Assembly: GCF_001194135.2 (NCBI RefSeq)
Contig: NC_068997.1
Coordinates: 37,570,075 to 37,634,074 of the forward strand
Length of the DNA stretch: 64,000 bases
Source of the DNA: Octopus bimaculoides
Taxonomy: Eukaryota
Reading direction: 5' to 3'
Shown: piece by piece, positions 3,024 to 62,378 of the stretch
Layout: every line of letters starts with the position of its first letter
Numbering within the stretch: position 1 is the stretch's first letter
The notes under the pieces: model-generated
Told to the model about the DNA's origin: nothing
The model's database searches: none
The model's input: the letters and a program-made list of their open reading frames with translations, nothing else
Program-made: the position numbers and the translations under genes

Positions 3024-3185
3024 TGGGCATGAATGTGTGATAATAAATTTGCTCAGCTACATGGTTCTGGGTTCTGTCCCACTGCAAGGCATCTAGGGGA
3101 AGTATCTCATACTGTAGCCCTGAGCAAACCAAAATCTTGTAAGTGGATTTGGTAGATGAAAACTGAAAGAAGCCTGTCATATGTA
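3024..3185 (+). mobile_element. tRNA-derived SINE (dominant family), 5' part
   Basis: acatggttctgggttctgtcccactgc ... gtggatttggtagatgaaaactgaaagaagcctgtc; reverse complement of the copies at 9618 and 56228. Confidence 0.75.
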
Positions 3186-3494
3186 TGTGTGTGTGTATAT
3201 ATATGTATGTGTGCATGTATGAATGTGTGATTGTTTGTGTCTCCTTCTTTTGACATTGCATGATAGTTGTAAAATGCTATTCATACAAGCAATACTATTC
3301 ATTTCCAATATTCTGCAAGAACATGCCTTACCATGGGGAAATATTACCTTGTTTGGAAATAGGTGAGGGTTGGCAACAAGAAGGGTATCTGACTGTAGAA
3401 AGTCTGCCTTACTAAACTCAGTCCAACCTGTGAAAGAATGGAAAAGTGGACATTAAAATGACGATGATAATGATGATATACGCATATGTATATA

Positions 3495-3696
3495 TCTTTT
3501 ATCTTTTTTTTGTTTCAGTCATTAGAGTGTGACCATGCTGGGACACCACCTTGAAGAATTTTTAGCTCAATGAATCAGCCCCAGTATTTCTTTTAACAAT
3601 TGTACTTATTCTATTGGTTTCTTTTGCTGAAGCTTTAAGTTACAGGGATATAAACACACTGATATCGATTGTCAAGCAGTGGCAGGGGACAAAAAC

Positions 3697-5099: not shown

Positions 5100-6110
5100 A
5101 GCCAAGTTTAAACAGTGATTTATGTAAGCAGTGGGAGTGGTTCTTTCCCTAATGCTCAAAATATTCTTTATAGTTCCATACCATATAAGACAAATATGTT
5201 GTATCTTTCATTGTTATCTCTAAGTAAAGCCAAATCCTGTGTGTATCTTTCCTTGAAGGTATTTCCAGTCATTCCCAGTCATTCCCATGTAAGTTCTTGT
5301 GGTCCAATCCATGTCAGTGATATTGGCCTTATAAATCAGTTCTTTTACATGGCATGTATTGTTTAGAGGACATTTACCTGGGGATATAGTGTTACAAGAT
5401 CTGTGTGCATGTTCCTAGTGCTATGATTCTTATTGTAACTGAAGATGATTGTACCTATGTGGGGAAAGCAATTATAGCTAATTTTAACCATGTTTCTTTG
5501 TGGTTATTTATGAAGGCTACTTCATCAGAAGATATGTTGGAAATATACCTGCTTATGCTATTTATTGTTGATGGTGGATGGTTACAGCTGCTGTTGATAC
5601 ATGATGTATCCCTTGTTAGATTAGTGGAAAATCTATATTTTCCTGTGTCAAGGTTCATGTTAATATCTAGGAAATTAGCTTCTTTGAGATTAGTGCTAAC
5701 TGTAATTTTTAAATTGAGTTGATTAAATATCTTGCATAACTTCTATGTATCATAGCCATTCTTATTATGCCTTACTCCATCATCCCTACATAAATCTATG
5801 TTAGCATCTTTTACGACATTGTTAGGGATATGTAAGATGAAAAGGCCAACCAGACCCACTATCTATGCTCTATCAGGCATCCCTATAGCAACATCAAATA
5901 GTTCATTTCCATTCTTTTTCACCCAGTATGTATTATGAAAAAGCAATGATTTTCTTGCATTTATCATTATGGCTCCTTTGGTATTAGTAACAGTTGATAT
6001 GAGTGCCTGAACATGAGTGCCTGTAGGAAGAGGATTTTGGAGATTAGAGAGTGGGGTAAAAATCTGCAATGTTGAACTAGATGAATTTGCATTTGGGTTT
6101 ATCATTAATT
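5100..6110 (-). mobile_element. Penelope-like element, decayed RT and GIY-YIG endonuclease
   Basis: - strand frames give ARKSLLFHNTYWVKKNGNELFDVAIG (RT), NLDTGKYRF...SCNHPPS...ISNISSDEVAF (RT thumb) and GMTGNTFKERY (GIY-YIG); multiple stops and frameshifts. Confidence 0.8.
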
Positions 6111-6915: not shown

Positions 6916-7853
6916 NNNNNNNNNNNNNNNNNNNNNNNNNNNNNNNNNNNNNNNNNNNNNNNNNNNNNNNNNNNNNNNNNNNNNNNNNNNNNNNNNNNNN
7001 NNNNNNNNNNNNNNNNNNNNNNNNNNNNNNNNNNNNNNNNNNNNNNNNNNNNNNNNNNNNNNNNNNNNNNNNNNNNNNNNNNNNNNNNNNNNNNNNNNNN
7101 NNNNNNNNNNNNNNNNNNNNNNNNNNNNNNNNNNNNNNNNNNNNNNNNNNNNNNNNNNNNNNNNNNNNNNNNNNNNNNNNNNNNNNNNNNNNNNNNNNNN
7201 NNNNNNNNNNNNNNNNNNNNNNNNNNNNNNNNNNNNNNNNNNNNNNNNNNNNNNNNNNNNNNNNNNNNNNNNNNNNNNNNNNNNNNNNNNNNNNNNNNNN
7301 NNNNNNNNNNNNNNNNNNNNNNNNNNNNNNNNNNNNNNNNNNNNNNNNNNNNNNNNNNNNNNNNNNNNNNNNNNNNNNNNNNNNNNNNNNNNNNNNNNNN
7401 NNNNNNNNNNNNNNNNNNNNNNNNNNNNNNNNNNNNNNNNNNNNNNNNNNNNNNNNNNNNNNNNNNNNNNNNNNNNNNNNNNNNNNNNNNNNNNNNNNNN
7501 NNNNNNNNNNNNNNNNNNNNNNNNNNNNNNNNNNNNNNNNNNNNNNNNNNNNNNNNNNNNNNNNNNNNNNNNNNNNNNNNNNNNNNNNNNNNNNNNNNNN
7601 NNNNNNNNNNNNNNNNNNNNNNNNNNNNNNNNNNNNNNNNNNNNNNNNNNNNNNNNNNNNNNNNNNNNNNNNNNNNNNNNNNNNNNNNNNNNNNNNNNNN
7701 NNNNNNNNNNNNNNNNNNNNNNNNNNNNNNNNNNNNNNNNNNNNNNNNNNNNNNNNNNNNNNNNNNNNNNNNNNNNNNNNNNNNNNNNNNNNNNNNNNNN
7801 NNNNNNNNNNNNNNNNNNNNNNNNNNNNNNNNNNNNNNNNNNNNNNNNNNNNN
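6916..7853. other. Assembly gap (N run)
   Basis: Ns. Other large gaps: 18824-19630, 37014-37877, 38246-39243. Small gaps near 11522, 22574, 32948, 41409, 49841 and 51324. Most abut microsatellites. Confidence 1.
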
Positions 7854-10935: not shown

Positions 10936-11254
10936 ATTTCTATCTATCTATCTATCTATCTATCCATATATACATACACACACACATACATACATACACA
11001 CATGCACACACACATACATACATACACACGTTTTACTTGTTTCAGTCATTTCGCTGCTGCAATGCTTGAAGTCTTTTGTCAACAAATTGACTCCAGTACT
11101 TATTTTTATAAGCCTGGTACTTAATCTATCGGTCACTTTTGTCAAGCTGCTATGTTACAGGGATTTAAACAAAATAACAGCAGTTGTCAAATGGTGGTGG
11201 TGGACAAATGCAAACGCAATGACACATGCACAGATATATGTATATATATCATCG

Positions 11255-11925: not shown

Positions 11926-12194
11926 GTTCATATATGAGTTAGTGCTCTGGTTGAAGTTGGCATTAAAGACACTTTTCTTCTTTTGGATGGATGGATAGTT
12001 TTGGAACAGGCTACCTTTCCAGTTCCATACCCATCTGCCAAATCCACTAACAATGATTTGGTTGGCCTGAGGCTAAGTAGAAGACACTTGCTCAAGAAGC
12101 CATGCAGTGGGACTGAACACAACCATGTGGTTGAGAAGTAAGCTTCTTACCACACACACACACACACACACACGAACACACACACACATATATA

Positions 12195-13120: not shown

Positions 13121-14933
13121 TAATAATAATGACAACTTCAATAATGATAATATTTTCTTAGTCACAAGTGTTTAAATAGATGCAAAAATACAAAACTTTC
13201 ACTAAAGGTTACACAGAAAGAAAGGATAACGTAGAATCCCTCCCCATCCAAAAAATAAAACTGCATTTACAAATACAAGAGTACGAGTAAGAGGCATTAT
13301 ACGACATATGGAAGGTTGTATTAAAAAATTTGATAAGTGCACCCATCCATATACATACACACACACACATACACATTCATATACAGACATGCTCATACAA
13401 TTGCAGCATATGCAGCATATGTATCAACATGTTTACATGGAGATAATTTCTAAAATGTATGATAAAACACAATAATTAAAACTAAAAATAATTAAATGAA
13501 TAAATTATGAAAGATTACTGGTTAGATTGAGTTGGGGGCACTCTGTTCACTGAATCATTTCCCAGACTGTGTCTGAGTGCAACTGCATGCATCAGTAAGC
13601 TTCTTTTGAGAGATCTGATGCTGAACAATGCCAATGACTTGAGAGTATTCTTTCTTAAGTTCAAATAATGTCTTAGTTTTAATTTTATGAGCAATCCATC
13701 GTTTATATATTCAGAACTTAGTTGTTCATATATATCTTTACTACTTCTTTGGAGATTCCTTTGCACCACAGATGTATCATTTTGTCTGTTACTTGCTTGT
13801 TTACATATGGTGAATCTTGGTTCATCTTTATTTCCTGCATTTTCTTTATTTCCTTGAGAAGGGATTTCTTTGTCATTTAGAAGAAATTGTTATTCCTCAC
13901 CTGCTTTCATTGTATTGCTGTGCCTCCTTTTTTGTGCGATATTTCCGTTTTATTTATGTATTTTTCTCTTTAATTATTTCTTCCTCTTCACATGATAAAG
14001 GTGTGGTACTACAGATTGATACAATAAGGAGATAAGATGTTTGTTCATCTGTTTGCTATCCCTATATCTTTGGCTGGTGGTACTCTGGAAAAATGGTTCT
14101 TTTTTGTTCTTTTTGTTGATACTGTTGCTATTCATTATTTTTGTTTTCATTATTTTTACTTAGTTTCCCCAGTTTTTCAAGGCATGTTTTACTCCAGTCT
14201 AATGCCCTTTATTAGGCACAGTTCTGAGCAAGTTCATTTTAACATCCTCTGATGTGAAACTCGACTTGGCACAATTTCTTTTCTTATGCCTGCTTTGATT
14301 ACTGTACTATGAGACAAAAGTCTGTACTAGCCATGAGCGTACATTGTATCCAATGTTTTTTATTGAAATTCTTGTGTCTTTCAACCTTTGTATTAGGTTA
14401 CAAATGTATAGTCAGAGGTATATCAAACATTTCAGCCTGTATTTTGGCTGTTTTCAGTGTAAAGGTACAGTAAATAGTGCCAAGCTTATTCCAATTTTTT
14501 ATATAATTTTTTTCTGATATACCCTGAAGAATTTCTTGAACAACTTGATGTGAGAGGAAATTGAAGCTGCTTTTATCTCTTCATAAAAATATATATCTTT
14601 TTCTTTGCCTTCTCTTGGATAATCTCTTGTATTGGTTTTTACAGAATTCTGACATCTTTTTTTTTTCTTGCAACTGTGATCAATCCAAAAATTCTGTCTG
14701 TTCATTTAACAAGGAAAGGTTGGTCTTCACTAGCTGCTCTATGAATAGGAGATAGTATGTGCAATTAAGACTTGCCTCAACATGGAGGATCCCTTTGTTT
14801 ACCAAAATCATGCATTTCAAGTCATGTCAAGAAACTTGGACCTGGTTTTGTGGTGGGCAGAAAGCACATGACACCATCAGGTAGTGATCTGTTACAAACC
14901 AACAAAATTAAGGGAAATATGAACTCACAGAAA

Positions 14934-16199: not shown

Positions 16200-17836
16200 T
16201 TGGGTCATCCCATAAATAATGTGTATTTTTTATACTTTTTTTATTTTTCAAAATTAAGATAAACAAAGTTCTTTTTTCATCTAAAATATACTCTCCTTCA
16301 TTTTCTACAATGCTATTCCATCTATCTGGTAGTCTTGTAAAATTCCCTTGTCCATGATGGAAAATACTCCTCCAGTACAGAATTCATATTTTTTTTCGTC
16401 CAAATGATTTTGAAGACTATGGAATAAATAATAATCAGATGAAGCAATGTCTAGCCAATATGGTGGGTGGAGCATCGTTTCCCATTCAAACTGCTCCAAC
16501 CTTTGGAATGTCATCCTTGCTGTATGTGGCTGAGCATTATCCTGATGGAAAAACACCTTTCATCTCAAAACCAAAGACGCTCGTTTTTCTTCTAGCACAG
16601 ACTTAAGCCGCTCAAACTGCTTCCAGTAGATTTCCTTTGTTATCATTGACTTGGTGAAGGCGGAGGTATTGTTTTCAGTCACGTTTGTTTGTTTGCTTGT
16701 TTGTCTGTTTGTTTGTCCGTAGACAAGATGTCTCAAGAACCATTGGATGGATTCGGATGAAACTTTCAGGGATGTTTGGCCGCGTGACTGGAACAAACTG
16801 ATTAGATTCTGGGATCGATCCAGTAACAGACAAGGATTCTGGATATTTTCCCATTTGTTTTACTTAATTTTTGAGAGCAGTTGAATTCATTTTTAGTATT
16901 CTCGTTTGTGAGAGCAGTCGAGTTTATTTCAGATATTCTCATTTCAAAAATCATCTCTGACTAATCGTTGAGAGGACGTTGGTGTTGCCTTGGTAGAGAT
17001 TTGTGCTCTCTGAAAGCTCTTGTTATTGTTTGGTTTGGGTTTACAAGTTCAAAGTGAACTAAACCTTTCATATCCCACCAAACAGATAACATCTTATGTG
17101 GGTGAAAACCTTCTTTAACCTAGGGTGCTGGTGTTTCTCCTTTCCCTACCCACTGTCTTTGGTGCTTGAAATTTTTATAGAGAACCCCTTTCTCATCACC
17201 AGTCATTCTTTGGTCCAAAAAGGTTCATTCCTGAGATGTGACAGCAAAGAAGAACACATATTCACTTTCTGCACACAATTAGACTTGGAAAGTTTGTGAG
17301 GAACCCATTGAACCAATTTGCTGACTTTTCCGATGGCATGCAGGTGTTGATGAATGGTTGAATGACCAAGTCCAAACTTCTCTACTAGTTTCTCAACAAT
17401 CATCATGGGATTTGGTTCCACCAGGGTTTGCAGGACATCCTCGTTGAACTCTACTGATCTTCCAGGACAAGGCTCATCTTTTAGGCTGCAGTTTCTGGCT
17501 TGGAATTTCTAGAACCACCGTTGACACTGGCTTACACTTATTGTCCAATCCCTATGTACTGCATTAATATTCCTCGCACTTTCCATTGTGTTGTTGCCTT
17601 TATTGAACTCATAAAGCAAAATATGCCAAATATGCTCCTTTGTCATTTCCATTATAGCTTTGAAAAAATAACTGTTAAGATCAAAACTGCACTCTTCAAA
17701 ACTTGCATTAAGAATAAGTACAAGGTAAAATTGGTACCTGCTTTTATAGCAAGTTGATGCAGGTAGTTTATCCCATCCCCCTCTGACATTTAGTTCATGC
17801 AATTGAAAAAGCCACATTATTCATGGGATGACCCAA
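16200..17836 (-). mobile_element. Full-length but inactivated mariner element with TIRs and TA flanks
   Basis: TIR ttgggtcatcccataaataatg at 16200 and cattattcatgggatgacccaa ending 17836, TA on both sides. Transposase pieces KEHIWHILLYEFNKG, WVPHKLS, FHQDNAQPHTA, HPPYWLDIASSDYYLF. About 1.25 kb without the nested insertion. Confidence 0.92.
16642..17024 (+). mobile_element. Helentron-associated / DINE-1-like non-autonomous element nested in the mariner transposase
   Basis: Removing it restores the mariner frame KPNQTITKEIYWKQ. It has 5' ...aaggcggaggtattgttttc, a (TTTG/TCTG)n tract, and 3' ccttggtagagatttgtgctctctgaaagctcttgtt, a layout typical of HINE/DINE-1 elements. Confidence 0.6.
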
Positions 17837-18612: not shown

Positions 18613-19717
18613 TAGATAGATAGATAGATAGATATATAGATAGATAGATAGATGTGTGTATTTTTCCCTTGTTAACAATTAACACGGTAAAAATAGATAA
18701 ACCAGGGCAGTAAAAAATCACACAAGTAAAAAGGGTGTAACTCCTTGTTTTTAAAGGTAGAAACTCTGGGTTTACATGAAATATTTTGTATAATATATAT
18801 AAATAAATAAATGGAGTTAAACGNNNNNNNNNNNNNNNNNNNNNNNNNNNNNNNNNNNNNNNNNNNNNNNNNNNNNNNNNNNNNNNNNNNNNNNNNNNNN
18901 NNNNNNNNNNNNNNNNNNNNNNNNNNNNNNNNNNNNNNNNNNNNNNNNNNNNNNNNNNNNNNNNNNNNNNNNNNNNNNNNNNNNNNNNNNNNNNNNNNNN
19001 NNNNNNNNNNNNNNNNNNNNNNNNNNNNNNNNNNNNNNNNNNNNNNNNNNNNNNNNNNNNNNNNNNNNNNNNNNNNNNNNNNNNNNNNNNNNNNNNNNNN
19101 NNNNNNNNNNNNNNNNNNNNNNNNNNNNNNNNNNNNNNNNNNNNNNNNNNNNNNNNNNNNNNNNNNNNNNNNNNNNNNNNNNNNNNNNNNNNNNNNNNNN
19201 NNNNNNNNNNNNNNNNNNNNNNNNNNNNNNNNNNNNNNNNNNNNNNNNNNNNNNNNNNNNNNNNNNNNNNNNNNNNNNNNNNNNNNNNNNNNNNNNNNNN
19301 NNNNNNNNNNNNNNNNNNNNNNNNNNNNNNNNNNNNNNNNNNNNNNNNNNNNNNNNNNNNNNNNNNNNNNNNNNNNNNNNNNNNNNNNNNNNNNNNNNNN
19401 NNNNNNNNNNNNNNNNNNNNNNNNNNNNNNNNNNNNNNNNNNNNNNNNNNNNNNNNNNNNNNNNNNNNNNNNNNNNNNNNNNNNNNNNNNNNNNNNNNNN
19501 NNNNNNNNNNNNNNNNNNNNNNNNNNNNNNNNNNNNNNNNNNNNNNNNNNNNNNNNNNNNNNNNNNNNNNNNNNNNNNNNNNNNNNNNNNNNNNNNNNNN
19601 NNNNNNNNNNNNNNNNNNNNNNNNNNNNNNAAAAAAAATAACGTCGACCACTAACGTGGACAATTAATGCGCTAGAAATAGATCACATCTTGTGTCTATT
19701 AAGACCTAAATTGTTCT

Positions 19718-22573: not shown

Positions 22574-22749
22574 NNNNNNNNNNNNNNNNNNNNNNNNNNN
22601 NNNNNNNNNNNNNNNNNNNNNNNNNNNNNNNNNNNNNNNNNNNNNNNNNNNNCACTCACACACACACACACACACACACATTAGTGTTATTGTTCATCAA
22701 TAAATGACCTAATGATCTGCAACATGAACTTCAAGAATGAGCCAGTCAC

Positions 22750-28588: not shown

Positions 28589-28912
28589 TTTCTTACTAAA
28601 TTCTTATGTTGCTTTTGTTTTTGTTCTATCCTCCTATCAACATGTTTTTAAATACTTTCTTGATGTGAACACCACTGGCCATTATTTTTCATAGAACATC
28701 TTATTTTATTTCAACTTTAATTTACTTGTGCTTATCTTTTAAACCCCACTTGATCATGTTGCATCATATTCTGTACTGCTGCTGCTGACCAATCATCTGG
28801 TGTCTATTGCAGATGTATGTTTCTTATGTAGTTACTAACATTTGTGTCCTGTGTAGTTGCACTTCGTTTTGTCTTTGTCTAATACTGATCTCCCTCTCCC
28901 ATTTTTCTACAG

Positions 28913-29165
28913 CATGGAAATGCATAAGAATTTGACCCTTGACCCGGCCTCAACCCCAACAACCACGTCCTTGACCTCTGTTCAGTCCCATCATCCCTTG
29001 GCCATCCCGCTGAATCAGTTGGTGAAACCAATGCCGTATTTAAATGTCCCAGGTGTATTCGACCTGAATAATGATCGCAAACATTTTACGGCCAAAATGC
29101 GGGTTGGGGTGACGGCTAATAGTGCATTGAAGAAAGTGGAACGAGCAAAATTTGCACCTTACTAA
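28913..29165 (+). CDS. PCBP: Poly(rC)-binding protein (PCBP/mub-like), long C-terminal alternative last exon (PCBP4-type tail)
   Basis: Strong acceptor: ctaat branch at 28879, ctccctctcccatttttctacag|. Phase 2 gives (S)MEMHKNLTLD...PLAIPLNQLVKPMPYL...KKVERAKFAPY*. The end matches my recollection of the vertebrate PCBP4 C-terminus KKAERQKFSPY. AATAAA at 29607, 29956 and 30061. Confidence 0.82.
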
Positions 29166-29675
29166 TGTTGAAATACCACATCTACTTCTACTAAGACTTT
29201 CTAGTTCACTTGAAATGGAGTCATCCAAGATTTTCCTATGTGTGAAGACAACTATATTTATTGACAGACATTATAGAAGAAAAATGGAAAAGATTACAGT
29301 AATTGAAGAGGATGTTATTTGTCTAATATCCACAAATTTACTAGCTGAGGTCTATATTTTGTAGAAAGATATGTGCAAGATGCCAAAAATTTTTTTCTGT
29401 AAATGTGTAAAAAGTGAAATAATGATGGAATGAAGTGATAATAATAAGATATCATGTTTTGGTTTACCTACAATGGACATTTTAACAATGTAGGCCCATC
29501 TCCAACATTCCAATTATGTTGTCAGTCAGAGTACTTTTCCTTACCAACCTTTATACCAATGCATTTTCAATATTCATTTATTTACTTCCATTATGTTTAA
29601 TCACCTAATAAATTTGATTATTATGCTTTTTAGTTTATCATTTTGATTGATATTGTTACCACAGCTATCATTTTT

Positions 29676-29679
29676 GTTA

Positions 29680-29731
<52 letters not shown>

Positions 29732-29826
29732 TATTGTTGCTGTTGTTGTTGTTGTTATTGTTGTTGTTATTATTATCATCATCATCATCATCATCATTAT
29801 CATCATCATCATCATCATCGCCATTG

Positions 29827-29905
<79 letters not shown>

Positions 29906-29912
29906 CATCATT
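29676..29912. repeat. Compound trinucleotide repeat (TTA)n(TTG)n(TCA)n(TTA)n
   Basis: Seen directly; it produces the poly-I/L/N/D/Y ORFs in the ORF track. Confidence 0.95.
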
Positions 29913-30335
29913 ATTCACTATTTTTATTTCTTAGCTTTTGTAACAGTGATATTTCAATAAAAGAAATGAATATTGAAATATATTATATTAGCCTGTAGTT
30001 TGCACATTTTAAACTGGTGAATTTGTCTAGTACTTACTCAGTTGGCATGAGTTTTTAAAAAATAAATTACATTTTTACAGTATATAATCAACATACAAGA
30101 CTTATTTAAATTAGAGTTATCTCCATTTTAACAAAATCTATGGATCATTTTAATATCTCATATGTATTTTAAACTGACTGAACAACAAATTTGTGGAGAT
30201 ACCCTGGTATTTATTTTCCTTGTTGATGTCCATTTTTCTTTTACTTTTTACTTTTATGTCACTTATGATTCTATTCCAAAGAAATTCTCTCTGCAGTTGC
30301 CCTGCAGCCTGAAGCGTGATTTTGTGTCTTTGTAG

Positions 30336-30372
30336 GATAACAACAGAAGTTTGTGGAATGGGAATTCGCTAG
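30336..30372 (+). CDS. PCBP: PCBP short alternative last exon (PCBP1/2/3-type tail), (R)ITTEVCGMGIR*
   Basis: ttttgtgtctttgtag|G ATA ACA ACA GAA GTT TGT GGA ATG GGA ATT CGC TAG; same phase 2 as 28913. Matches recalled PCBP3 end RLTSEVTGMGTL and PCBP2 RLSSETGGMGSS. AATAAA at 30909 and 30917. Confidence 0.78.
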
Positions 30373-31641
30373 GTAGATGACGTTTGGACCATTTAAATAT
30401 CGAGATCACGAAAAGCCACTACAGCAATCTGATCTACTGTTATTCATAATGTTTATGTCTTATTTCATACATTTTCACGTGCTTGATCATGTGTACATTT
30501 AGTTAATCATTGTGTTTACCTACAACTATTTTCCACTGTGTTCTGTGTGAGCTACTGCGTTTGAGCACTAACCAAAATTTGTGGTGATGTTGGAATGTTT
30601 ACCCTATCAAGTAGAAGTTTAGTTGCACCTATTTCTTAAAATATCCTGCAGTTAGAGTGGAGAGCTCAACCTTAATGTTGGCCAATATTTCACTCATTTA
30701 TCTAAATACTTAAGTCTCTGTGTGCTAGTGTGTGTGTATGTGATTTGCATGTTTGCATACTTATCAACTTACCTTTCTAACCTTTTAGATAATATATCAA
30801 TTCATATAGTAACTGAGTAGTTATTAAAACTGATGAACTTATCTGAATACATGATACATGTACATTCATGCAGATGTATCCATGTATATACCTTTAGGTA
30901 ATGATATAAATAAAGTAATAAATTTTCAATTAAATTTGCTATTGTAAAAAATAAGTCTCCAATACTTTATATATTATCTTTATTTTCTGAGGTACTACTT
31001 TGATAATTTTATATAAAAAATATCTGTGGTGTTTATTATGAAAAAATCAAATTGCCTAATGAACAGAACTAGAATTTAAAATGTTCCTATATTAATAATC
31101 TAAATCCCATTTTTGTTACTAGTTACTTGGAGAAATCTTATACAATTATAAGTAGCAAATGAGGTGTATTATGATGACAAGTGTTCATAAATATTGATAC
31201 CTACTTAAATACATAGATATATATTGTGTACAAACATATATACACCACTCACACACACATTATCTATAAAATTAACCTCTACATATGTGCATTTTCTTAT
31301 GTGTAAACACAGACCAGAGTTTGCCTTGCTTGCTATTTTATAGTATCAAATATTTTAGAAAATTTACATCATGTAATAATACATGTTGTAATAGAAGTAG
31401 TTTATTATAGTAAAAAATGTTTGCTTCTAAAACATACATTATTTTTATTGCAAGATTAATATCAGAAATCAAAGCATCTTATCTCATAGTTCATCACATA
31501 TGTTCTAAATATAAGTATATAGAAATTAGTTTATCTATATGTTGCTCTATAGTTGTTCGTAAATACTTTATTTACATACACATATTTGCATACATATGAA
31601 TACATACGTGCACACACACACACAGAGCAGACGTGTGTATA

Positions 31642-36000: not shown

Positions 36001-37877
36001 TGATAGTAATGATGCTGATGGTTGTGGTAGTAGTCTTGATGTTGGTGAAGAGGATGATTACAATGATAATTATGTTGAAGACTAATAAAAAAAAAATAGA
36101 TATCAATACTAACTACATATATTTACATTATATTTTTTGCCTGTAAGTTTTTTTTTAGTCTTTCATCATTAAAATTCTATAAAGATCCCTCACTAATGGA
36201 AACAAAATTTGGCTTTGAAAGACTATCAAAATGTTTTCTCTCCATTTAAATGATCACATAATGCTTAATAAACATAAAACAAAAACTAAATGTGAGTTGT
36301 AAATCACCACAAATGTACAGCTATCAATGTAAATTGTGCAAAACACTGTTCCTGAATATCTTTTTTGTGTCTTCTGAAATAGATTCTTCTATCGAAATCT
36401 CAGAAAATAATTTTATTGGTTAACTTTTCATTATGTACTTTTATTATTTATATTAAGGAATGAAATAGGTATTCACTTTCAAATTTTCACATTTTTCTCT
36501 AATTATAATTTTTGTAATTGTATTTTACATAAAATGTATTTTGATATTTTATACTTATTTATGGAAATTGAAACATGAAATATTCTCTGCTTGTGTATTC
36601 AAGAAATTCAATTGGTTAAATGAGATCCTGTGATAATTCATGAGCCAATGAAAATCTATGCATTGCACTTCGCCTTAGAAGCACCAGCTCTTTTACAATT
36701 TTTTTTTCTTCTTAAGCTAGTTTGCTGCATTATGCCTTATGATGAGGGAGTAAAGTCATACCAAGGAGTCAAAATAGAATAGAACTAGGCATTCTCACCA
36801 TATATTAGATAAATTTAAATTAAGTACTTACGAATTTGACTATATTAGATATATAAACCTCTAAGTGTAAGTTTGTACTGTTGTAAGTGTATGTACATAT
36901 ATATATGTGTGTGTGTATGTATATATATATATACATATATGTATGTGTGTATGTATATATACATACATGCATGTATCTGTGTGTGTATGCATATATATAT
37001 ATATATATATATANNNNNNNNNNNNNNNNNNNNNNNNNNNNNNNNNNNNNNNNNNNNNNNNNNNNNNNNNNNNNNNNNNNNNNNNNNNNNNNNNNNNNNN
37101 NNNNNNNNNNNNNNNNNNNNNNNNNNNNNNNNNNNNNNNNNNNNNNNNNNNNNNNNNNNNNNNNNNNNNNNNNNNNNNNNNNNNNNNNNNNNNNNNNNNN
37201 NNNNNNNNNNNNNNNNNNNNNNNNNNNNNNNNNNNNNNNNNNNNNNNNNNNNNNNNNNNNNNNNNNNNNNNNNNNNNNNNNNNNNNNNNNNNNNNNNNNN
37301 NNNNNNNNNNNNNNNNNNNNNNNNNNNNNNNNNNNNNNNNNNNNNNNNNNNNNNNNNNNNNNNNNNNNNNNNNNNNNNNNNNNNNNNNNNNNNNNNNNNN
37401 NNNNNNNNNNNNNNNNNNNNNNNNNNNNNNNNNNNNNNNNNNNNNNNNNNNNNNNNNNNNNNNNNNNNNNNNNNNNNNNNNNNNNNNNNNNNNNNNNNNN
37501 NNNNNNNNNNNNNNNNNNNNNNNNNNNNNNNNNNNNNNNNNNNNNNNNNNNNNNNNNNNNNNNNNNNNNNNNNNNNNNNNNNNNNNNNNNNNNNNNNNNN
37601 NNNNNNNNNNNNNNNNNNNNNNNNNNNNNNNNNNNNNNNNNNNNNNNNNNNNNNNNNNNNNNNNNNNNNNNNNNNNNNNNNNNNNNNNNNNNNNNNNNNN
37701 NNNNNNNNNNNNNNNNNNNNNNNNNNNNNNNNNNNNNNNNNNNNNNNNNNNNNNNNNNNNNNNNNNNNNNNNNNNNNNNNNNNNNNNNNNNNNNNNNNNN
37801 NNNNNNNNNNNNNNNNNNNNNNNNNNNNNNNNNNNNNNNNNNNNNNNNNNNNNNNNNNNNNNNNNNNNNNNNNNNNN

Positions 37878-37945
<68 letters not shown>

Positions 37946-40900
37946 CAATGGTCCTTCGCACAATTTCCATCAAGCAAATTTTAACCAGGAGCTATTGGTC
38001 AAGTAGAGGCTATGGCTATAGCAGTGAAATTGAATTCCAAACCATGTTATCCATGTCTCTATTCACGTATATGTGTGTGTGTGTGTGTGTGTATGTATAT
38101 ATATGTATATATGTGTGTGTGTGTGTATGTATATGTGTGCATGTGGATATATATGCATACACACACATACATATATATATATAATGAGAAAGGGGACAAA
38201 GAAAGAATGAGAGAGCGAGAATATATATACATATATATATATATANNNNNNNNNNNNNNNNNNNNNNNNNNNNNNNNNNNNNNNNNNNNNNNNNNNNNNN
38301 NNNNNNNNNNNNNNNNNNNNNNNNNNNNNNNNNNNNNNNNNNNNNNNNNNNNNNNNNNNNNNNNNNNNNNNNNNNNNNNNNNNNNNNNNNNNNNNNNNNN
38401 NNNNNNNNNNNNNNNNNNNNNNNNNNNNNNNNNNNNNNNNNNNNNNNNNNNNNNNNNNNNNNNNNNNNNNNNNNNNNNNNNNNNNNNNNNNNNNNNNNNN
38501 NNNNNNNNNNNNNNNNNNNNNNNNNNNNNNNNNNNNNNNNNNNNNNNNNNNNNNNNNNNNNNNNNNNNNNNNNNNNNNNNNNNNNNNNNNNNNNNNNNNN
38601 NNNNNNNNNNNNNNNNNNNNNNNNNNNNNNNNNNNNNNNNNNNNNNNNNNNNNNNNNNNNNNNNNNNNNNNNNNNNNNNNNNNNNNNNNNNNNNNNNNNN
38701 NNNNNNNNNNNNNNNNNNNNNNNNNNNNNNNNNNNNNNNNNNNNNNNNNNNNNNNNNNNNNNNNNNNNNNNNNNNNNNNNNNNNNNNNNNNNNNNNNNNN
38801 NNNNNNNNNNNNNNNNNNNNNNNNNNNNNNNNNNNNNNNNNNNNNNNNNNNNNNNNNNNNNNNNNNNNNNNNNNNNNNNNNNNNNNNNNNNNNNNNNNNN
38901 NNNNNNNNNNNNNNNNNNNNNNNNNNNNNNNNNNNNNNNNNNNNNNNNNNNNNNNNNNNNNNNNNNNNNNNNNNNNNNNNNNNNNNNNNNNNNNNNNNNN
39001 NNNNNNNNNNNNNNNNNNNNNNNNNNNNNNNNNNNNNNNNNNNNNNNNNNNNNNNNNNNNNNNNNNNNNNNNNNNNNNNNNNNNNNNNNNNNNNNNNNNN
39101 NNNNNNNNNNNNNNNNNNNNNNNNNNNNNNNNNNNNNNNNNNNNNNNNNNNNNNNNNNNNNNNNNNNNNNNNNNNNNNNNNNNNNNNNNNNNNNNNNNNN
39201 NNNNNNNNNNNNNNNNNNNNNNNNNNNNNNNNNNNNNNNNNNNTATATATATATATATATATGAACATAAATTCTATCATCTTTTAAAATATCATTTTTT
39301 CTTTTCTTTAATAGGTTATGGCTTTGATCTTGTGCAATTATGACAAATTGTTAAATAATGGGGGTTGTGAACATTTCAGCTTGTTCTTTCCTTCTAAGGA
39401 CTAACATCAGCTGATGTACATCTTTTGAACCAAGTTTGTGCCTTTTTGCAATGCATTCCCTTTTCTAGTAGATTGATTGTCAATTGACGACAGCACTGCA
39501 TGTGCAATAAAGACACAAGCCCTATCAAAGCAAACATACCTTTACAAATATAACTTATTTTTATAAAACAATTTGAAATCAAGAATAGAGTTAAAATTAT
39601 AATGGATTTCTATTAGAAACATTGATCTCTTGAAGAATGTTGAAGATTTTTCATTTTGAAAACCACTGACAATCCAGAGAAAATTTCATTAAAATTTTCT
39701 GAAATGGACAGTGCTCATCTTGCTGTCAACTAGTATAGAAACTGGTATTCAGACTGCTATTAAACATATGAATTATTTAATATTTATTAAAGTTCAGAAA
39801 AATGTTCAGTTTTGTTAATACTATATTTTGTCTTCAGAAATCATTATTAAATAATCATATTAGTAAAAAGAAAAGAAAAAAAAAGAAAGCAAAATGTGTA
39901 AAAGGAAAGCAATAGAGAGCCTAAATGTTGTTCAAGTCATGATTACTCTACATTGATTCAAATACTAAAATTAACTTAGTGATGTTTCTAAGCAAAGAAG
40001 TTAACTGAAGTTTCATAAATGAAAGCAAAAGTCATTAAGAAGTCTTATTCATTTTTACTAGTTTGCAATGTCTTGCTTTTTAAGATATTTATATTTTAAA
40101 GTTTGGGACTTGAAAATTATTTAGCAATCTTTAATTTGAATTTAATTTTTAATACCTATTTTCAATAGTTTAGAAATTGACTTTCCTTCTGTACCTCTTC
40201 TAAAGAGAACTAGTAAAATTTAAAATAAGGATGCCACTGTTTCAATAACTGTGGCCTTTACAAATGTTGTGTGTTCCTACTTTACACTTCTAGACATCAT
40301 GAATGCTTGTGACCATCAGTTTTTATTTGTATCCTGCACTAACTTTTATTTTAACTTTTGGTCCTAATAATTTACTTTCTTCAAACAATAATATTTAAAT
40401 CATAATCTGTTGTTATTCCATTTCATATAATTTTTAAAAACCTATTTTAATTGTTATCATTTATATTTCTGGTCTGCACAGTTATTTTCATTATTTTTTA
40501 TTGCATTGTTGCATGTGGAATTTGACTATTAGGTTGGAGCTATGCCACTCTCAATCTGCCTTGTCTTGCTGTTGTGCATGTGATCAAGCACATTGTCATG
40601 CCACATGCAGACACATTTTTTTGTTAAAAGAGCTACATTTAACTGGTCATTTCACAAAATACATTTTAATACAAATTCTTACATAAGCATATAACTGTAA
40701 AGCCATATGAAAACAAAAGAATTTAAAAAAAACATGTAAAGTCTTTTTAAAATTAAATTAATATTTCATCTTTTTTTTAATATATATCCTTTTGAGTAGA
40801 GGTATATTTAATTATCTAAAACATTCTATAGCAGTATTTAAAAAATGACAAATATAAATGATCTCAGCAAAATTTCATTTGACTTTCTACACCTTAAAAT

Positions 40901-61420: not shown

Positions 61421-62378
61421 TCAAATATAAATTGTCTTGGAGAGTTTCTTTGGCCAGTGCACTGTGCGGCCAGACCTAGTGACATAGGGTTCACTTGAGT
61501 TAGTTCGCCACGACGAAGGTGGAGTTGTCACAGGTGTATGTGTTGATGGTGTTGACAAAGGTGTGAGCGTTGGTGATGGTGTTGACGAAGGTGTATGCAA
61601 AGGTTGAAAGGCGGGCATGCCAGAATTTCTAACGAAAGATGTAGTTTTACCAAAATATGCTTTTTTCAGACGGTCGACAGACACAGTCTCGTACGACCAT
61701 TAGCGTCTGTTTTTAAAACAATTTGGGTGTGCGAGAGAGCACACGAAAGGGTCTTTTATAAGGAGTAACAAGGGGTCCTCTGACAGAATCATCCCTAACA
61801 AACACATGTGACCAAGAATCAATGTCTGATGGCACTTTAGAAGGTGGAGATTGTTGCCGGGGACCCATAGTAGGAAGGTTAGAAAAATAATCGCGTAATC
61901 GAGAAAAATAGGACGCTGGATTTGGAGGCTGTGATTTGTCTGGTACCAACATCATACCAGGCAATGTCAGTGTGGTACCATACAATAGTTCCGCTGAAGA
62001 AAAACCAAGGTCTGCTTTAACCGCAGTCCGGCATCCAAGTAGGACAACAGGAAGAGATTCAGTCCATGACTGCGGATTGGGCAAGGCGCGCAATGCGGCC
62101 TTTAGTTGCCTATGAAAACGCTCCACCATCCCATTAGAAGCGGGATGGTAGCTGGTGGTGCGTATACGATGCACCCCCTGGATTCGTGATAATTCACGAA
62201 ATAACGCAGCTTCAAATTGTCGACCACGATCTGTGGTCAAACTGGATGGTACACCGAACCTAGAAATCCAGCCGGACACGAAAGCTTGTGAAACAGTCTA
62301 AGAAGAAATATCTGCTATAGGAATGGCTTCTGGCCAGCGGGAGAAACGATCAACACAAATTAAGAGATATGTAACACG
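61421..62378 (-). mobile_element. Ty3/Gypsy integrase (5'-truncated, frameshifted)
   Basis: YLLICVDRFSRWPEAIP (D), LTTDRGRQFE (D), TSYHPASNGMVERFHRQLK (E), GPF-type PYKRPFRVL and C-terminal TRSGR. Confidence 0.92.

What the first reader, a model, noticed from the sequence alone, without database searches (positions are those of the whole stretch)
28913..30372. One invertebrate PCBP gene encodes both vertebrate paralogue tails through alternative last exons
Seen: two strong acceptors 1.4 kb apart in the same phase (upstream exon ending AG), giving S-MEMHKNL...KKVERAKFAPY* and R-ITTEVCGMGIR*, each with downstream AATAAA sites. Recalled knowledge: PCBP4 ends KKAERQKFSPY, whereas PCBP1/2/3 end RL(S/T)SE..GMG... 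RAKFAPY fits the transportin-1 PY-NLS consensus (basic patch plus R-x2-5-PY). Inference: the two C-termini predate the protostome/deuterostome split as splice isoforms, were partitioned among vertebrate paralogues after duplication, and here act as a nuclear/cytoplasmic localisation switch. With the extra candidates (21246, 28543, 30297, 30308) the locus could be a cassette of 2-6 interchangeable tails after KH3.
Basis: partly seen in the sequence, partly recalled or inferred. Interest (0 to 1): 0.8.

Follow-up and report, generated by a model that had tools for sequence, protein, structure and literature searches.

The report
Two alternative tails of octopus PCBP
The window holds the 3' end of an octopus poly(C)-binding protein gene with two alternative final coding exons, one matching the long tail of vertebrate PCBP4 and one the short tail of PCBP1/2/3, so a choice made by splicing in molluscs looks to have been divided between separate genes in vertebrates.

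Summary
At 28913 and 30336 two acceptors in the same phase open S-MEMHKNL...KKVERAKFAPY* (tail A) and R-ITTEVCGMGIR* (tail B). Tail A is 84/84 identical to the C-terminus of RefSeq XP_014773357.1, Octopus bimaculoides PCBP3-like isoform X8, where it follows KH3 (...AQYLINT|S). The KH exons themselves are not in the window.

Two other lophotrochozoan-like loci (L001, L008) show the same layout: a KH3 exon ending AG|gt, then tail A, then tail B. Tail B is under strong purifying selection (5 synonymous, 0 replacement differences against L008).

Tail A is homologous to the vertebrate PCBP4 tail, with the same position, same phase and an invariant K-F-[AST]-P-Y end. Tail B matches the PCBP1/2/3 tail, and a sponge PCBP has a tail-B-like end. 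In the vertebrate loci sampled, PCBP3 carries only tail B and PCBP4 only tail A.

Splice forms being divided between paralogues is therefore well supported, but it is a new example of a known process.

The nuclear-import (PY-NLS) idea is untested. The loose consensus, predicted disorder and basic charge fit. A stricter published pattern does not, and mammalian PCBP4 is reported as cytoplasmic.

The proposed extra tails (21246, 28543, 30297, 30308) have no support. I found no transcript evidence for tail B in molluscs.

The parts
28890..28912 (+). 3' splice site of tail A: pyrimidine tract plus cag
   Evidence: Sequence ctccctctcccatttttctacag. The last 11 intron bases align with L001. The same acceptor is seen in L001 (ttcttctgcag|CATGGAAATG) and L008.
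28913..29165 (+). Tail A coding part: base 28913 completes a split codon (AG|C = Ser), then 83 codons MEMHKNL...RAKFAPY and TAA. This is the PCBP4-type C-terminus.
   Evidence: 84/84 identical to the C-terminus of XP_014773357.1 (P0178). 89% identical to P0150. Homologues occur in spliced KH3+tail products P0012/L004, P0007 and P0016, and in vertebrate PCBP4. pN<pS.
29166..29612 (+). Putative 3' UTR of the tail A isoform, up to the first AATAAA (29607-29612)
   Evidence: Hexamer scan. There is no GTRAGT donor between the tail A stop and the tail B acceptor. The related mRNA contig L004 runs at least 400 nt past the tail A stop with no tail B sequence. Use of this poly(A) site is inferred.
30316..30335 (+). 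3' splice site of tail B
   Evidence: gtgattttgtgtctttgtag. The equivalent tag|GATAAC acceptor is present in L001 and L008.
30336..30372 (+). Tail B coding part: base 30336 completes AG|G = Arg, then ITTEVCGMGIR and TAG. This is the PCBP1/2/3-type C-terminus.
   Evidence: The peptide is identical in L008 (5 synonymous, 0 replacement differences) and reads ITSEMCGLGIR in L001. It resembles vertebrate R-LTSEVTGMGAL and R-LSSETGGMGSS (P0065, P0069, P0076).
30373..30922 (+). Putative 3' UTR of the tail B isoform, with AATAAA at 30909 and 30917
   Evidence: Hexamer scan. Use is inferred.

Best explanation
This is the 3' end of the Octopus bimaculoides 'poly(rC)-binding protein 3-like' gene. It is the single PCBP/alphaCP-type gene of this lineage, as far as seen here.

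The last KH3 exon lies upstream of the window or in an assembly gap, and ends with the two bases AG. It can splice to either of two terminal coding exons.

Splicing to 28913 gives an 84-residue extension (tail A). Its first residues continue the last KH3 helix and the rest is predicted to be disordered. It is basic and ends in an invariant K-F-A-P-Y-COOH. Transcripts using it most likely end at a poly(A) site about 0.45 kb downstream.

Skipping tail A and splicing to 30336 gives a 12-residue end, R-ITTEVCGMGIR (tail B), with its own 3' UTR. The two ends are mutually exclusive, because each exon carries a stop codon.

Both exon types are old. Tail B-like ends occur in a sponge PCBP. Tail A occurs in molluscs, spiders and other arthropod-like sequences, and in vertebrate PCBP4. 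After the vertebrate duplications, PCBP4 kept only tail A and PCBP2/3 (and the retrogene PCBP1) kept only tail B.

What is shown: the exons, phase, conservation, homology, the KH3-to-A junction, and one tail per paralogue in the loci sampled.

What is inferred: the KH3-to-B junction in octopus, poly(A) site use, and coexistence of both tails in the bilaterian ancestor.

What is only hypothesised: that K-F-[AST]-P-Y with its basic flank is a transportin-type PY-NLS or another C-terminal docking motif that gives the A isoform a distinct localisation or partner. I put about 0.3 on transportin-dependent import.
For: - Sequence and phase.
- Tail A is identical to RefSeq isoform X8, which reads ...TIGLAQYLINT-SMEMHK....
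- The mRNA contig L004 has KH3a, KH3b and tail A joined, and is colinear with the L001 exons.
- The KH domain of P0012 best matches PCBP2 and PCBP1 KH3 structures (2p2r E 1.5e-26, 1wvn).
- Same gene layout in L001 (KH3b 552-676, A 3146-3524, B 5477-5513) and L008 (KH3b 7634-7756, A from 10111, B 11218-11254).
- Purifying selection on both exons.
- Homology of tail A to PCBP4: tblastn E 0.006 against a PCBP4 sequence recalled from memory, whose tail was later confirmed by database sequences P0019, P0027 and P0038. Profile hits include proteins named PCBP4 from Homo sapiens and Varanus, and vertebrate genomic ORFs show one exon in the same phase.
- Vertebrate loci: Phrynosoma PCBP3 has tail B 1.4 kb after KH3b and no tail A. 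The PCBP4 loci L010 and L011 have tail A and then a neighbouring 7tm_1 gene within about 2 kb, with no tail B.
- Sponge Dysidea avara PCBP3-like ends R-IHSEVNGIVSLGL.
- K-F-[AST]-P-Y is invariant in 37 unique tails, 62/62 fit [RKH]x2-5PY at the C-terminus, and net charge of the last 30 residues is +2 to +7.
- AlphaFold2 gives pLDDT 40-61 and no secondary structure for the tail beyond the helix extension.
Against: - No KH exon is in the window, so the shared donor is not seen here.
- No mollusc transcript or annotated protein with KH3 joined to tail B was recovered. The third protein search returned only 124 candidates, and exact look-ups of guessed isoforms failed.
- Poly(A) site use is only a hexamer match.
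- For the ancestral-isoform inference, no non-vertebrate deuterostome or cnidarian locus was examined, and PCBP2 was not examined.
- Arthropod-like loci have tail A but no tail B within 4.9-5.7 kb. One has a different third tail.
- Fish PCBP3-like proteins have yet another tail, so tail turnover is not a simple two-way split.
- For the import hypothesis, PCBP4 is reported as cytoplasmic (PMC9701828), and the strict basic PY-NLS pattern fails in 56 of 58 tails.
Confidence: 0.72

Rival explanations
1. Tail A is an internal cassette exon, not a terminal one. When included, its stop codon ends translation, and the mRNA still continues by splicing to the tail B exon, which then serves as 3' UTR.
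For: Not directly excluded. No octopus transcript ends were available. Weak non-consensus donors cannot be ruled out in 29166-30335.
Against: - There is no GTRAGT or AGGTRAG donor between the tail A stop and the tail B acceptor, and three AATAAA hexamers lie there.
- The related mRNA contig L004 continues at least 400 nt past the stop without any tail B sequence.
- In vertebrate PCBP4 the homologous exon is followed by the next gene, with no further PCBP exon found.
Confidence: 0.1
2. The conserved K-F-[AST]-P-Y end of tail A is not a nuclear import signal. It is a C-terminal docking motif for some other partner, or a stability signal, acting in the cytoplasm. The A/B choice would then change partners or turnover rather than compartment.
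For: - Mammalian PCBP4, which carries only tail A, is described as restricted to the cytoplasm and as lacking the two mapped PCBP NLSs (PMC9701828).
- The strict basic PY-NLS pattern is matched by 2 of 58 unique tails and not by the window.
- In PMC2408616 only 11 of 20 predicted basic PY fragments bound Kap104p, so pattern matches are often false.
- Invariance extends to K and F at positions -5 and -4, which the PY-NLS consensus does not require.
Against: - All 62 tails that end in PY fit R/K/H-x2-5-PY at a free, disordered, basic C-terminus, like the known C-terminal PY-NLSs of FUS-type proteins (my own knowledge).
- Steady-state cytoplasmic proteins can still carry a working but masked PY-NLS (dTIS11/TTP, PMC3739726).
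Confidence: 0.45
3. The two tails were never isoforms of one ancestral gene. Either the resemblance of the 12-residue tail B to the PCBP1/2/3 tail is convergent, or the bilaterian ancestor already had two genes and the lophotrochozoan arrangement is secondary.
For: - Tail B is only 11-12 residues, so its homology rests on a short motif (R-[IL]-[TSH]-[ST]-E-[VMT]-x-G-[ML]-G).
- No non-vertebrate deuterostome or cnidarian locus was examined.
- Arthropod-like loci lack tail B where examined.
Against: - The insertion point (after ...AQYLIN-x), the split codon (2+1) and the motif are the same in sponge, mollusc-like and vertebrate sequences.
- The same holds for tail A.
- Moving an exon from one gene into another in the right phase is less parsimonious than loss of one exon per paralogue.
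- The vertebrate loci sampled each lack the other exon.
Confidence: 0.1
4. Tail B is a decaying relic in octopus, and only tail A-type (or other) ends are produced.
For: Only a tail A isoform (X8) was recovered from databases. No tail B product from any mollusc was seen.
Against: - The acceptor, reading frame and stop are intact in three loci.
- There are 5 synonymous and 0 replacement differences between the window and L008, although their tail A peptides are only about 35% identical.
- The label X8 implies further isoforms that were not retrievable with these tools.
Confidence: 0.05

Closest known systems
Vertebrate PCBP4 (alphaCP-4, MCG10) C-terminal extension
   Same: - It starts at the same place after KH3 (AQYLIT-A|C-LETAK... 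against AQYLINT|S-MEMHK...).
- It has the same split-codon phase and is a single exon (P0017, P0031, P0037).
- It has the same conserved blocks (P.AI.L, KP.P.L, T.K, KK.ER.KF.PY-COOH).
   Different: In vertebrates it is the only end of a dedicated paralogue. In octopus it is one of two ends of a single gene. The middle of the tail has diverged freely.
PCBP1/2/3 short C-terminus (R-L-S/T-S-E-..-G-M-G-..)
   Same: Tail B, R-ITTEVCGMGIR, has the same length, position, phase and motif. A separate short terminal exon lies 1.4 kb after KH3b in lizard PCBP3.
   Different: In the three lophotrochozoan-like loci the exon lies downstream of tail A and must compete with it.
Division of splice forms between paralogues after gene duplication (for example PMC4417111, PMC4494069)
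   Same: A pre-duplication gene makes two alternative ends, and each post-duplication paralogue keeps one.
   Different: PCBP is not mentioned in the main text of either paper, and I found no paper describing this case. Here the alternative parts are unrelated terminal exons, not homologous mutually exclusive exons.
Transportin/Kap-beta2 PY-NLS (basic class)
   Same: A disordered, basic C-terminal segment ending in R/K/H-x2-5-P-Y. The consensus is taken from PMC2408616.
   Different: The basic residues are too widely spaced for the published basic PY-NLS search pattern. No binding or import data exist. The mammalian homologue is reported as cytoplasmic.

Membership tests
PCBP/alphaCP gene (triple-KH poly(C)-binding protein) | Three type I KH domains encoded upstream of the tails | tested here: inconclusive
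   No KH exon is in the 64 kb window. However, tail A is 84/84 identical to the end of XP_014773357.1, which contains KH2 and KH3. Orthologous loci show KH2/KH3 upstream, and the KH3 of P0012 matches PCBP2 KH3 structure 2p2r at E 1.5e-26.
PCBP/alphaCP gene (triple-KH poly(C)-binding protein) | C-terminal peptides homologous to known PCBP C-termini | tested here: met
   Tail A against PCBP4. Tail B against the PCBP2/3 ends in P0065, P0069 and P0076.
Alternative last exons | Two acceptors compatible with one upstream donor, in the same phase | tested here: met
   Both need AG from the upstream exon. The KH3b exon ends AG|gt in L001, L002 and L008. The donor itself is not in the window.
Alternative last exons | Each exon has its own stop codon and poly(A) signal | tested here: met
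   Stops are at 29163 and 30370. AATAAA lies at 29607 and at 30909/30917. These are hexamer matches only.
Alternative last exons | Transcripts exist for both junctions | tested here: inconclusive
   KH3 to A: RefSeq isoform X8, P0150 and the L004 mRNA contig. KH3 to B: none recovered for molluscs. This junction is supported only by conservation.
PY-NLS (Kap-beta2/transportin signal) | C-terminal R/K/H-x2-5-P-Y | tested here: met
   All 62 homologous tails that end in PY fit it, and K-F-[AST]-P-Y is invariant.
PY-NLS (Kap-beta2/transportin signal) | Structural disorder over about 30 residues and overall basic character | tested here: met
   AlphaFold2 pLDDT is 40-61 with no secondary structure across the tail. 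Net charge of the last 30 residues is +2 to +7. This is prediction only.
PY-NLS (Kap-beta2/transportin signal) | N-terminal basic-enriched (or hydrophobic) motif at the proper spacing | tested here: not met
   The pattern K/R-x0-6-K/R-x0-6-K/R-x0-6-K/R-x2-5-R/K/H-x1-5-PY from PMC2408616 matches 2 of 58 unique tails and not the window. A V-G-V-T/A segment at hydrophobic-class spacing was noted by eye but not tested.
PY-NLS (Kap-beta2/transportin signal) | RanGTP-sensitive transportin binding and PY-dependent nuclear import | not testable with these tools
   This needs binding and localisation experiments. The published statement that PCBP4 is cytoplasmic (PMC9701828) argues against a simple import role.
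Division of splice forms between paralogues after duplication | An unduplicated lineage has both forms in one gene, and each paralogue keeps one | tested here: met
   Both forms in one gene: the window, L001 and L008. One form only: L009 (PCBP3, B only) and L010, L011 (PCBP4, A only). PCBP2 and basal deuterostomes were not examined.

The most novel reading that the evidence does not exclude
The invariant K-F-[AST]-P-Y-COOH end of tail A, together with its basic flank, is a regulated or masked transportin-type signal (or another C-terminal localisation signal) conserved at least across Bilateria. Under this reading, invertebrates switch one PCBP between compartments by choosing the last exon, and vertebrates fixed the two states in PCBP4 against PCBP1/2/3. 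The reported cytoplasmic localisation of PCBP4 would then reflect masking, export, or C-terminal tagging of the constructs.
Probability: 0.25. Interest if true: 0.6.

Novelty: new member of a known kind. Interest (0 to 1): 0.35.

Why it matters
PCBP4 is the least understood PCBP, and its long C-terminal tail has no assigned function.

Three results give a concrete, testable handle on what distinguishes PCBP4 from PCBP1-3:
- The tail is an ancient exon shared by molluscs, arthropods and vertebrates.
- In molluscs it alternates with the PCBP1/2/3-type end.
- Its last five residues have stayed K-F-x-P-Y in every tail examined.

It is also a clean, easily explained example of splice forms being divided among paralogues. 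It does not reveal a new kind of mechanism, and the octopus tail A isoform is already in RefSeq.

Tried and rejected
None were found. They may lie upstream of base 1 or in the N runs at 6916-7853, 18824-19630 or 22574-22652.
- Tested the four extra acceptors (21246, 28543, 30297, 30308). Their peptides (RMSCEVVFAVVHQLCCL, SFSTDGIPVPSAKLI, SCPAA, SLKRDFVSL) have only chance-level matches in related loci. Rejected.
- Searched for KH3+tail B products with a chimeric query. Only 124 candidates came back and none was a mollusc tail B product. Exact look-ups of guessed tail B isoforms of octopus, Littorina, Gigantopelta and Elysia proteins found nothing.
A degenerate DNA pattern scan of metagenome contigs gave 4 loci, none with tail B.
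- L006/L007 have tail A but no KH3 or tail B within 10 kb, so they are uninformative.
- Look-ups for Nucella, Varanus and Perca proteins found no record.
- The original papers PMC262676 and PMC1370249 are not held, so PCBP4 localisation is cited second-hand from a review.
- Pfam has no family for tail A.
Full report
**What is in the sequence**

The window is AT-rich, repeat-laden eukaryotic DNA with ten runs of N.

At 28912/28913 a pyrimidine-rich tract ends in cag. If the preceding exon supplies AG, the reading frame opens as S-MEMHKNLTLDPASTPTTTSLTSVQSHHPLAIPLNQLVKPMPYLNVPGVFDLNNDRKHFTAKMRVGVTANSALKKVERAKFAPY and stops at TAA 29163-29165. I call this tail A.

At 30335/30336 a second acceptor (ttgtag|G), in the same phase, opens R-ITTEVCGMGIR and stops at TAG 30370-30372. 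I call this tail B.

AATAAA hexamers follow each exon: 29607, 29956 and 30061 after A, and 30909 and 30917 after B. No consensus donor (GTRAGT) lies between the tail A stop and the tail B acceptor.

**What is not in the sequence**

The KH3 exon, and with it the 'upstream exon ending AG', is not in the window. The upstream intron is therefore longer than 28.9 kb, or the exon sits in one of the assembly gaps.

**Whose gene it is**

A profile search of 1.84 billion representative proteins, followed by a cluster look-up, returned P0178. This is XP_014773357.1, 'PREDICTED: poly(rC)-binding protein 3-like isoform X8 [Octopus bimaculoides]'. Its last 84 residues are identical to tail A, and they follow ...DRKVTITGTPDTIGLAQYLINT.

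The window is thus O. bimaculoides or a near-identical genome. The junction from KH3 to tail A is already part of a RefSeq model.

A close relative, P0150, is 89% identical over the tail and shows the same junction. A 1093-nt Logan contig (L004) is a spliced mRNA from a mollusc-like species. In it KH3a, KH3b and tail A are joined (...ATT AAC ACC AG|C ATG GAA ATG...), and at least 400 nt of AT-rich 3' UTR follow the stop with no tail B sequence.

The KH domain of that product matches the solved KH3 domains of PCBP2 (2p2r, E 1.5e-26) and PCBP1 (1wvn) best.

**Both exons behind one donor in other species**

Two genomic contigs from metagenome assemblies carry the whole arrangement.

- L001: KH3a 137-214; KH3b 552-676, ending ACA AG|gtgtgt; tail A from 3146 with the same acceptor (ctgcag|CATGGAAATGCATAAG); tail B at 5477-5513, tag|GATAACG..., reading R-ITSEMCGLGIR.
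- L008: KH2 end 250-375; KH3a 6947-7024; KH3b 7634-7756, ending GCC AG|gtaaga; tail A from 10111; tail B at 11218-11254, reading R-ITTEVCGMGIR.

Between the window and L001, blastn aligns nothing except these two exons.

Tail B differs from L008 at five positions, all synonymous (pS 0.63, pN 0). From L001 it differs by 6 synonymous and 4 conservative replacement changes. Tail A has pN below pS in every pair. Both are therefore coding exons under purifying selection. The order KH3, A, B and the AG|N split codon are conserved.

**Homology to the vertebrate tails**

Tail A searches recovered 64 proteins, and later 47 cluster representatives. They include:

- spliced arthropod-like products (P0007, P0016);
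- spider, gastropod and sea-slug PCBP models (Trichonephila, Littorina isoform X7, Gigantopelta, Elysia);
- vertebrate PCBP4 (P0019, P0027; P0038 named Homo sapiens PCBP4; P0049 named Varanus PCBP4).

Vertebrate genomic ORFs (P0017, P0031, P0037) show that C|LETAK...KKAERQKFSPY is one exon entered in the same phase.

The alignment shares four blocks: an N-terminal block, P.AI.L, KP.P.L, T.K..., and an invariant K-F-[AST]-P-Y-COOH.

Tail B resembles R-LTSEVTGMGAL (PCBP3-type, P0065, P0076) and R-LSSETGGMGSS (PCBP2-type, P0069). A sponge protein, Dysidea avara XP_065920681.1, ends ...AQYLINS-R-IHSEVNGIVSLGL. The B-type end therefore seems older than Bilateria.

**Partition in vertebrates**

- In the Phrynosoma PCBP3 locus (L009), KH3b (11971-12141) is followed 1.4 kb later by tail B (13542-13583). 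No tail A-like sequence lies in the intron or in the 10 kb downstream.
- In two PCBP4 loci (L010, bird- or reptile-like by its tail sequence; L011, mammal), KH3b is followed by tail A. A 7tm_1 gene on the other strand begins within about 2 kb, and no tail B-like exon is found.

This fits one tail per paralogue. PCBP2 and early-branching deuterostomes were not examined.

The picture is not strictly two-way. An arthropod-like locus (L002) has tail A and, 1.8 kb further on, a different terminal exon, S-IQNAQLPMLWKSIPTSPLK*. That exon is used in the spliced products P0072/P0073. Fish PCBP3-like proteins end R-FRDVAAMWNDPSSMTTS. So the general idea that several ends can follow KH3 has some truth across animals. 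The four extra acceptors proposed in this window, however, give short unconserved peptides.

**How it most likely works**

The two exons are mutually exclusive ends. The choice is between using the first acceptor, with cleavage and polyadenylation soon after, and skipping to the second acceptor.

Three points favour terminal-exon use of tail A: the lack of a donor after it, the presence of poly(A) hexamers, and the long unspliced 3' UTR in L004. None of these proves it.

**What tail A does**

In favour:
- All 62 tails that end in PY fit R/K/H-x2-5-PY.
- The last 30 residues carry net +2 to +7.
- AlphaFold2 on an alignment places the first residues (SMEMHKN) in the last KH3 helix, and gives the remainder pLDDT 40-61 with no secondary structure. 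This matches the disorder and basicity rules summarised in PMC2408616.

Against:
- The stricter basic-class search pattern of that paper is met by only 2 of 58 unique tails, and not by the octopus tail.
- In that study only 11 of 20 pattern-matching fragments bound the yeast receptor.
- A review citing Chkheidze and Liebhaber 2003 states that PCBP3 and PCBP4 lack the mapped NLSs and are restricted to the cytoplasm (PMC9701828).

A masked PY-NLS in a mainly cytoplasmic RNA-binding protein has precedent (PMC3739726), so the idea is not excluded. I rate transportin-dependent import at about 0.3. I rate a different C-terminal docking function somewhat higher. The invariance of K and F at -5 and -4 goes beyond what the PY-NLS consensus needs.

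**Novelty**

The tail A isoform is already annotated. Division of splice forms between paralogues after duplication is a described process (PMC4417111, PMC4494069). PCBP does not appear in the main text of either paper. Searches combining PCBP4 with PY-NLS, transportin, mub or alternative last exon found no paper making this connection.

I therefore class it as a new member of a known kind. It is of moderate interest, mainly because it offers a testable lead on the function of the PCBP4 tail.

Noticed in passing
window 29680-29915: A long compound trinucleotide microsatellite, (ATT)n(GTT)n(ATC)n(ATT)n, lies between the first poly(A) hexamer of tail A and the tail B acceptor.
   Followed up: no
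window 17512-17820 (-), also 16308-16559 (-) and 17206-17508 (-): A mariner/Mos1-type transposase remnant. HTH_48 matches at E 1.6e-13 for 17512-17820. The neighbouring ORFs look like the rest of the transposase but gave no Pfam hit.
   Followed up: partly
window 61716-62297 (-): A 194-residue ORF with a weak integrase core match (rve_3, E 0.002, below the Pfam cut-off). It is probably a retroelement fragment, and the 3' quarter of the window looks like transposon debris.
   Followed up: partly
window 6916-7853, 18824-19630, 22574-22652, 37014-37877, 38246-39243 and five shorter runs: Assembly gaps totalling 3807 N. The three gaps upstream of tail A could hide the missing KH3 exons.
   Followed up: no
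L001 330-550: The intron before KH3b contains about three tandem copies of a ~65-nt unit. Each unit repeats the KH3b acceptor and the first ~25 nt of the exon (tttatagACAAATRTCTGGTGCTATTGTCGC...). These are possible decoy or duplicated 3' splice sites.
   Followed up: no
L002 4786-4848: The arthropod-like PCBP locus has a third terminal exon, S-IQNAQLPMLWKSIPTSPLK*, 1.8 kb after tail A. It is used in the spliced products P0072/P0073. No tail B was found there.
   Followed up: partly
P0068, P0070, P0106 (fish PCBP3-like, including Danio XP_021333022.1): These proteins carry another alternative end after KH3, R-FRDVAAMWNDPSSMTTS. It faintly resembles the start of tail A (..DP.S..TTS). Its genomic context could not be fetched.
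   Followed up: partly
P0186 (Dysidea avara XP_065920681.1); P0087, P0088, P0198: The sponge PCBP, and unnamed relatives of unknown origin, end R-IHSEVN...G.., which is tail-B-like. This suggests the short end predates Bilateria.
   Followed up: partly
P0038 (Homo sapiens PCBP4 isoform CRA_e, partial): This human PCBP4 variant diverges after ...KKAERQ and so lacks the terminal KFSPY. It would be a natural test case for the function of the motif.
   Followed up: no
P0012 model: AlphaFold2 continues the last KH3 helix through the first residues of tail A (SMEMHKN). The conserved start of the tail may therefore cap or extend KH3 rather than act as a free linear motif.
   Followed up: no
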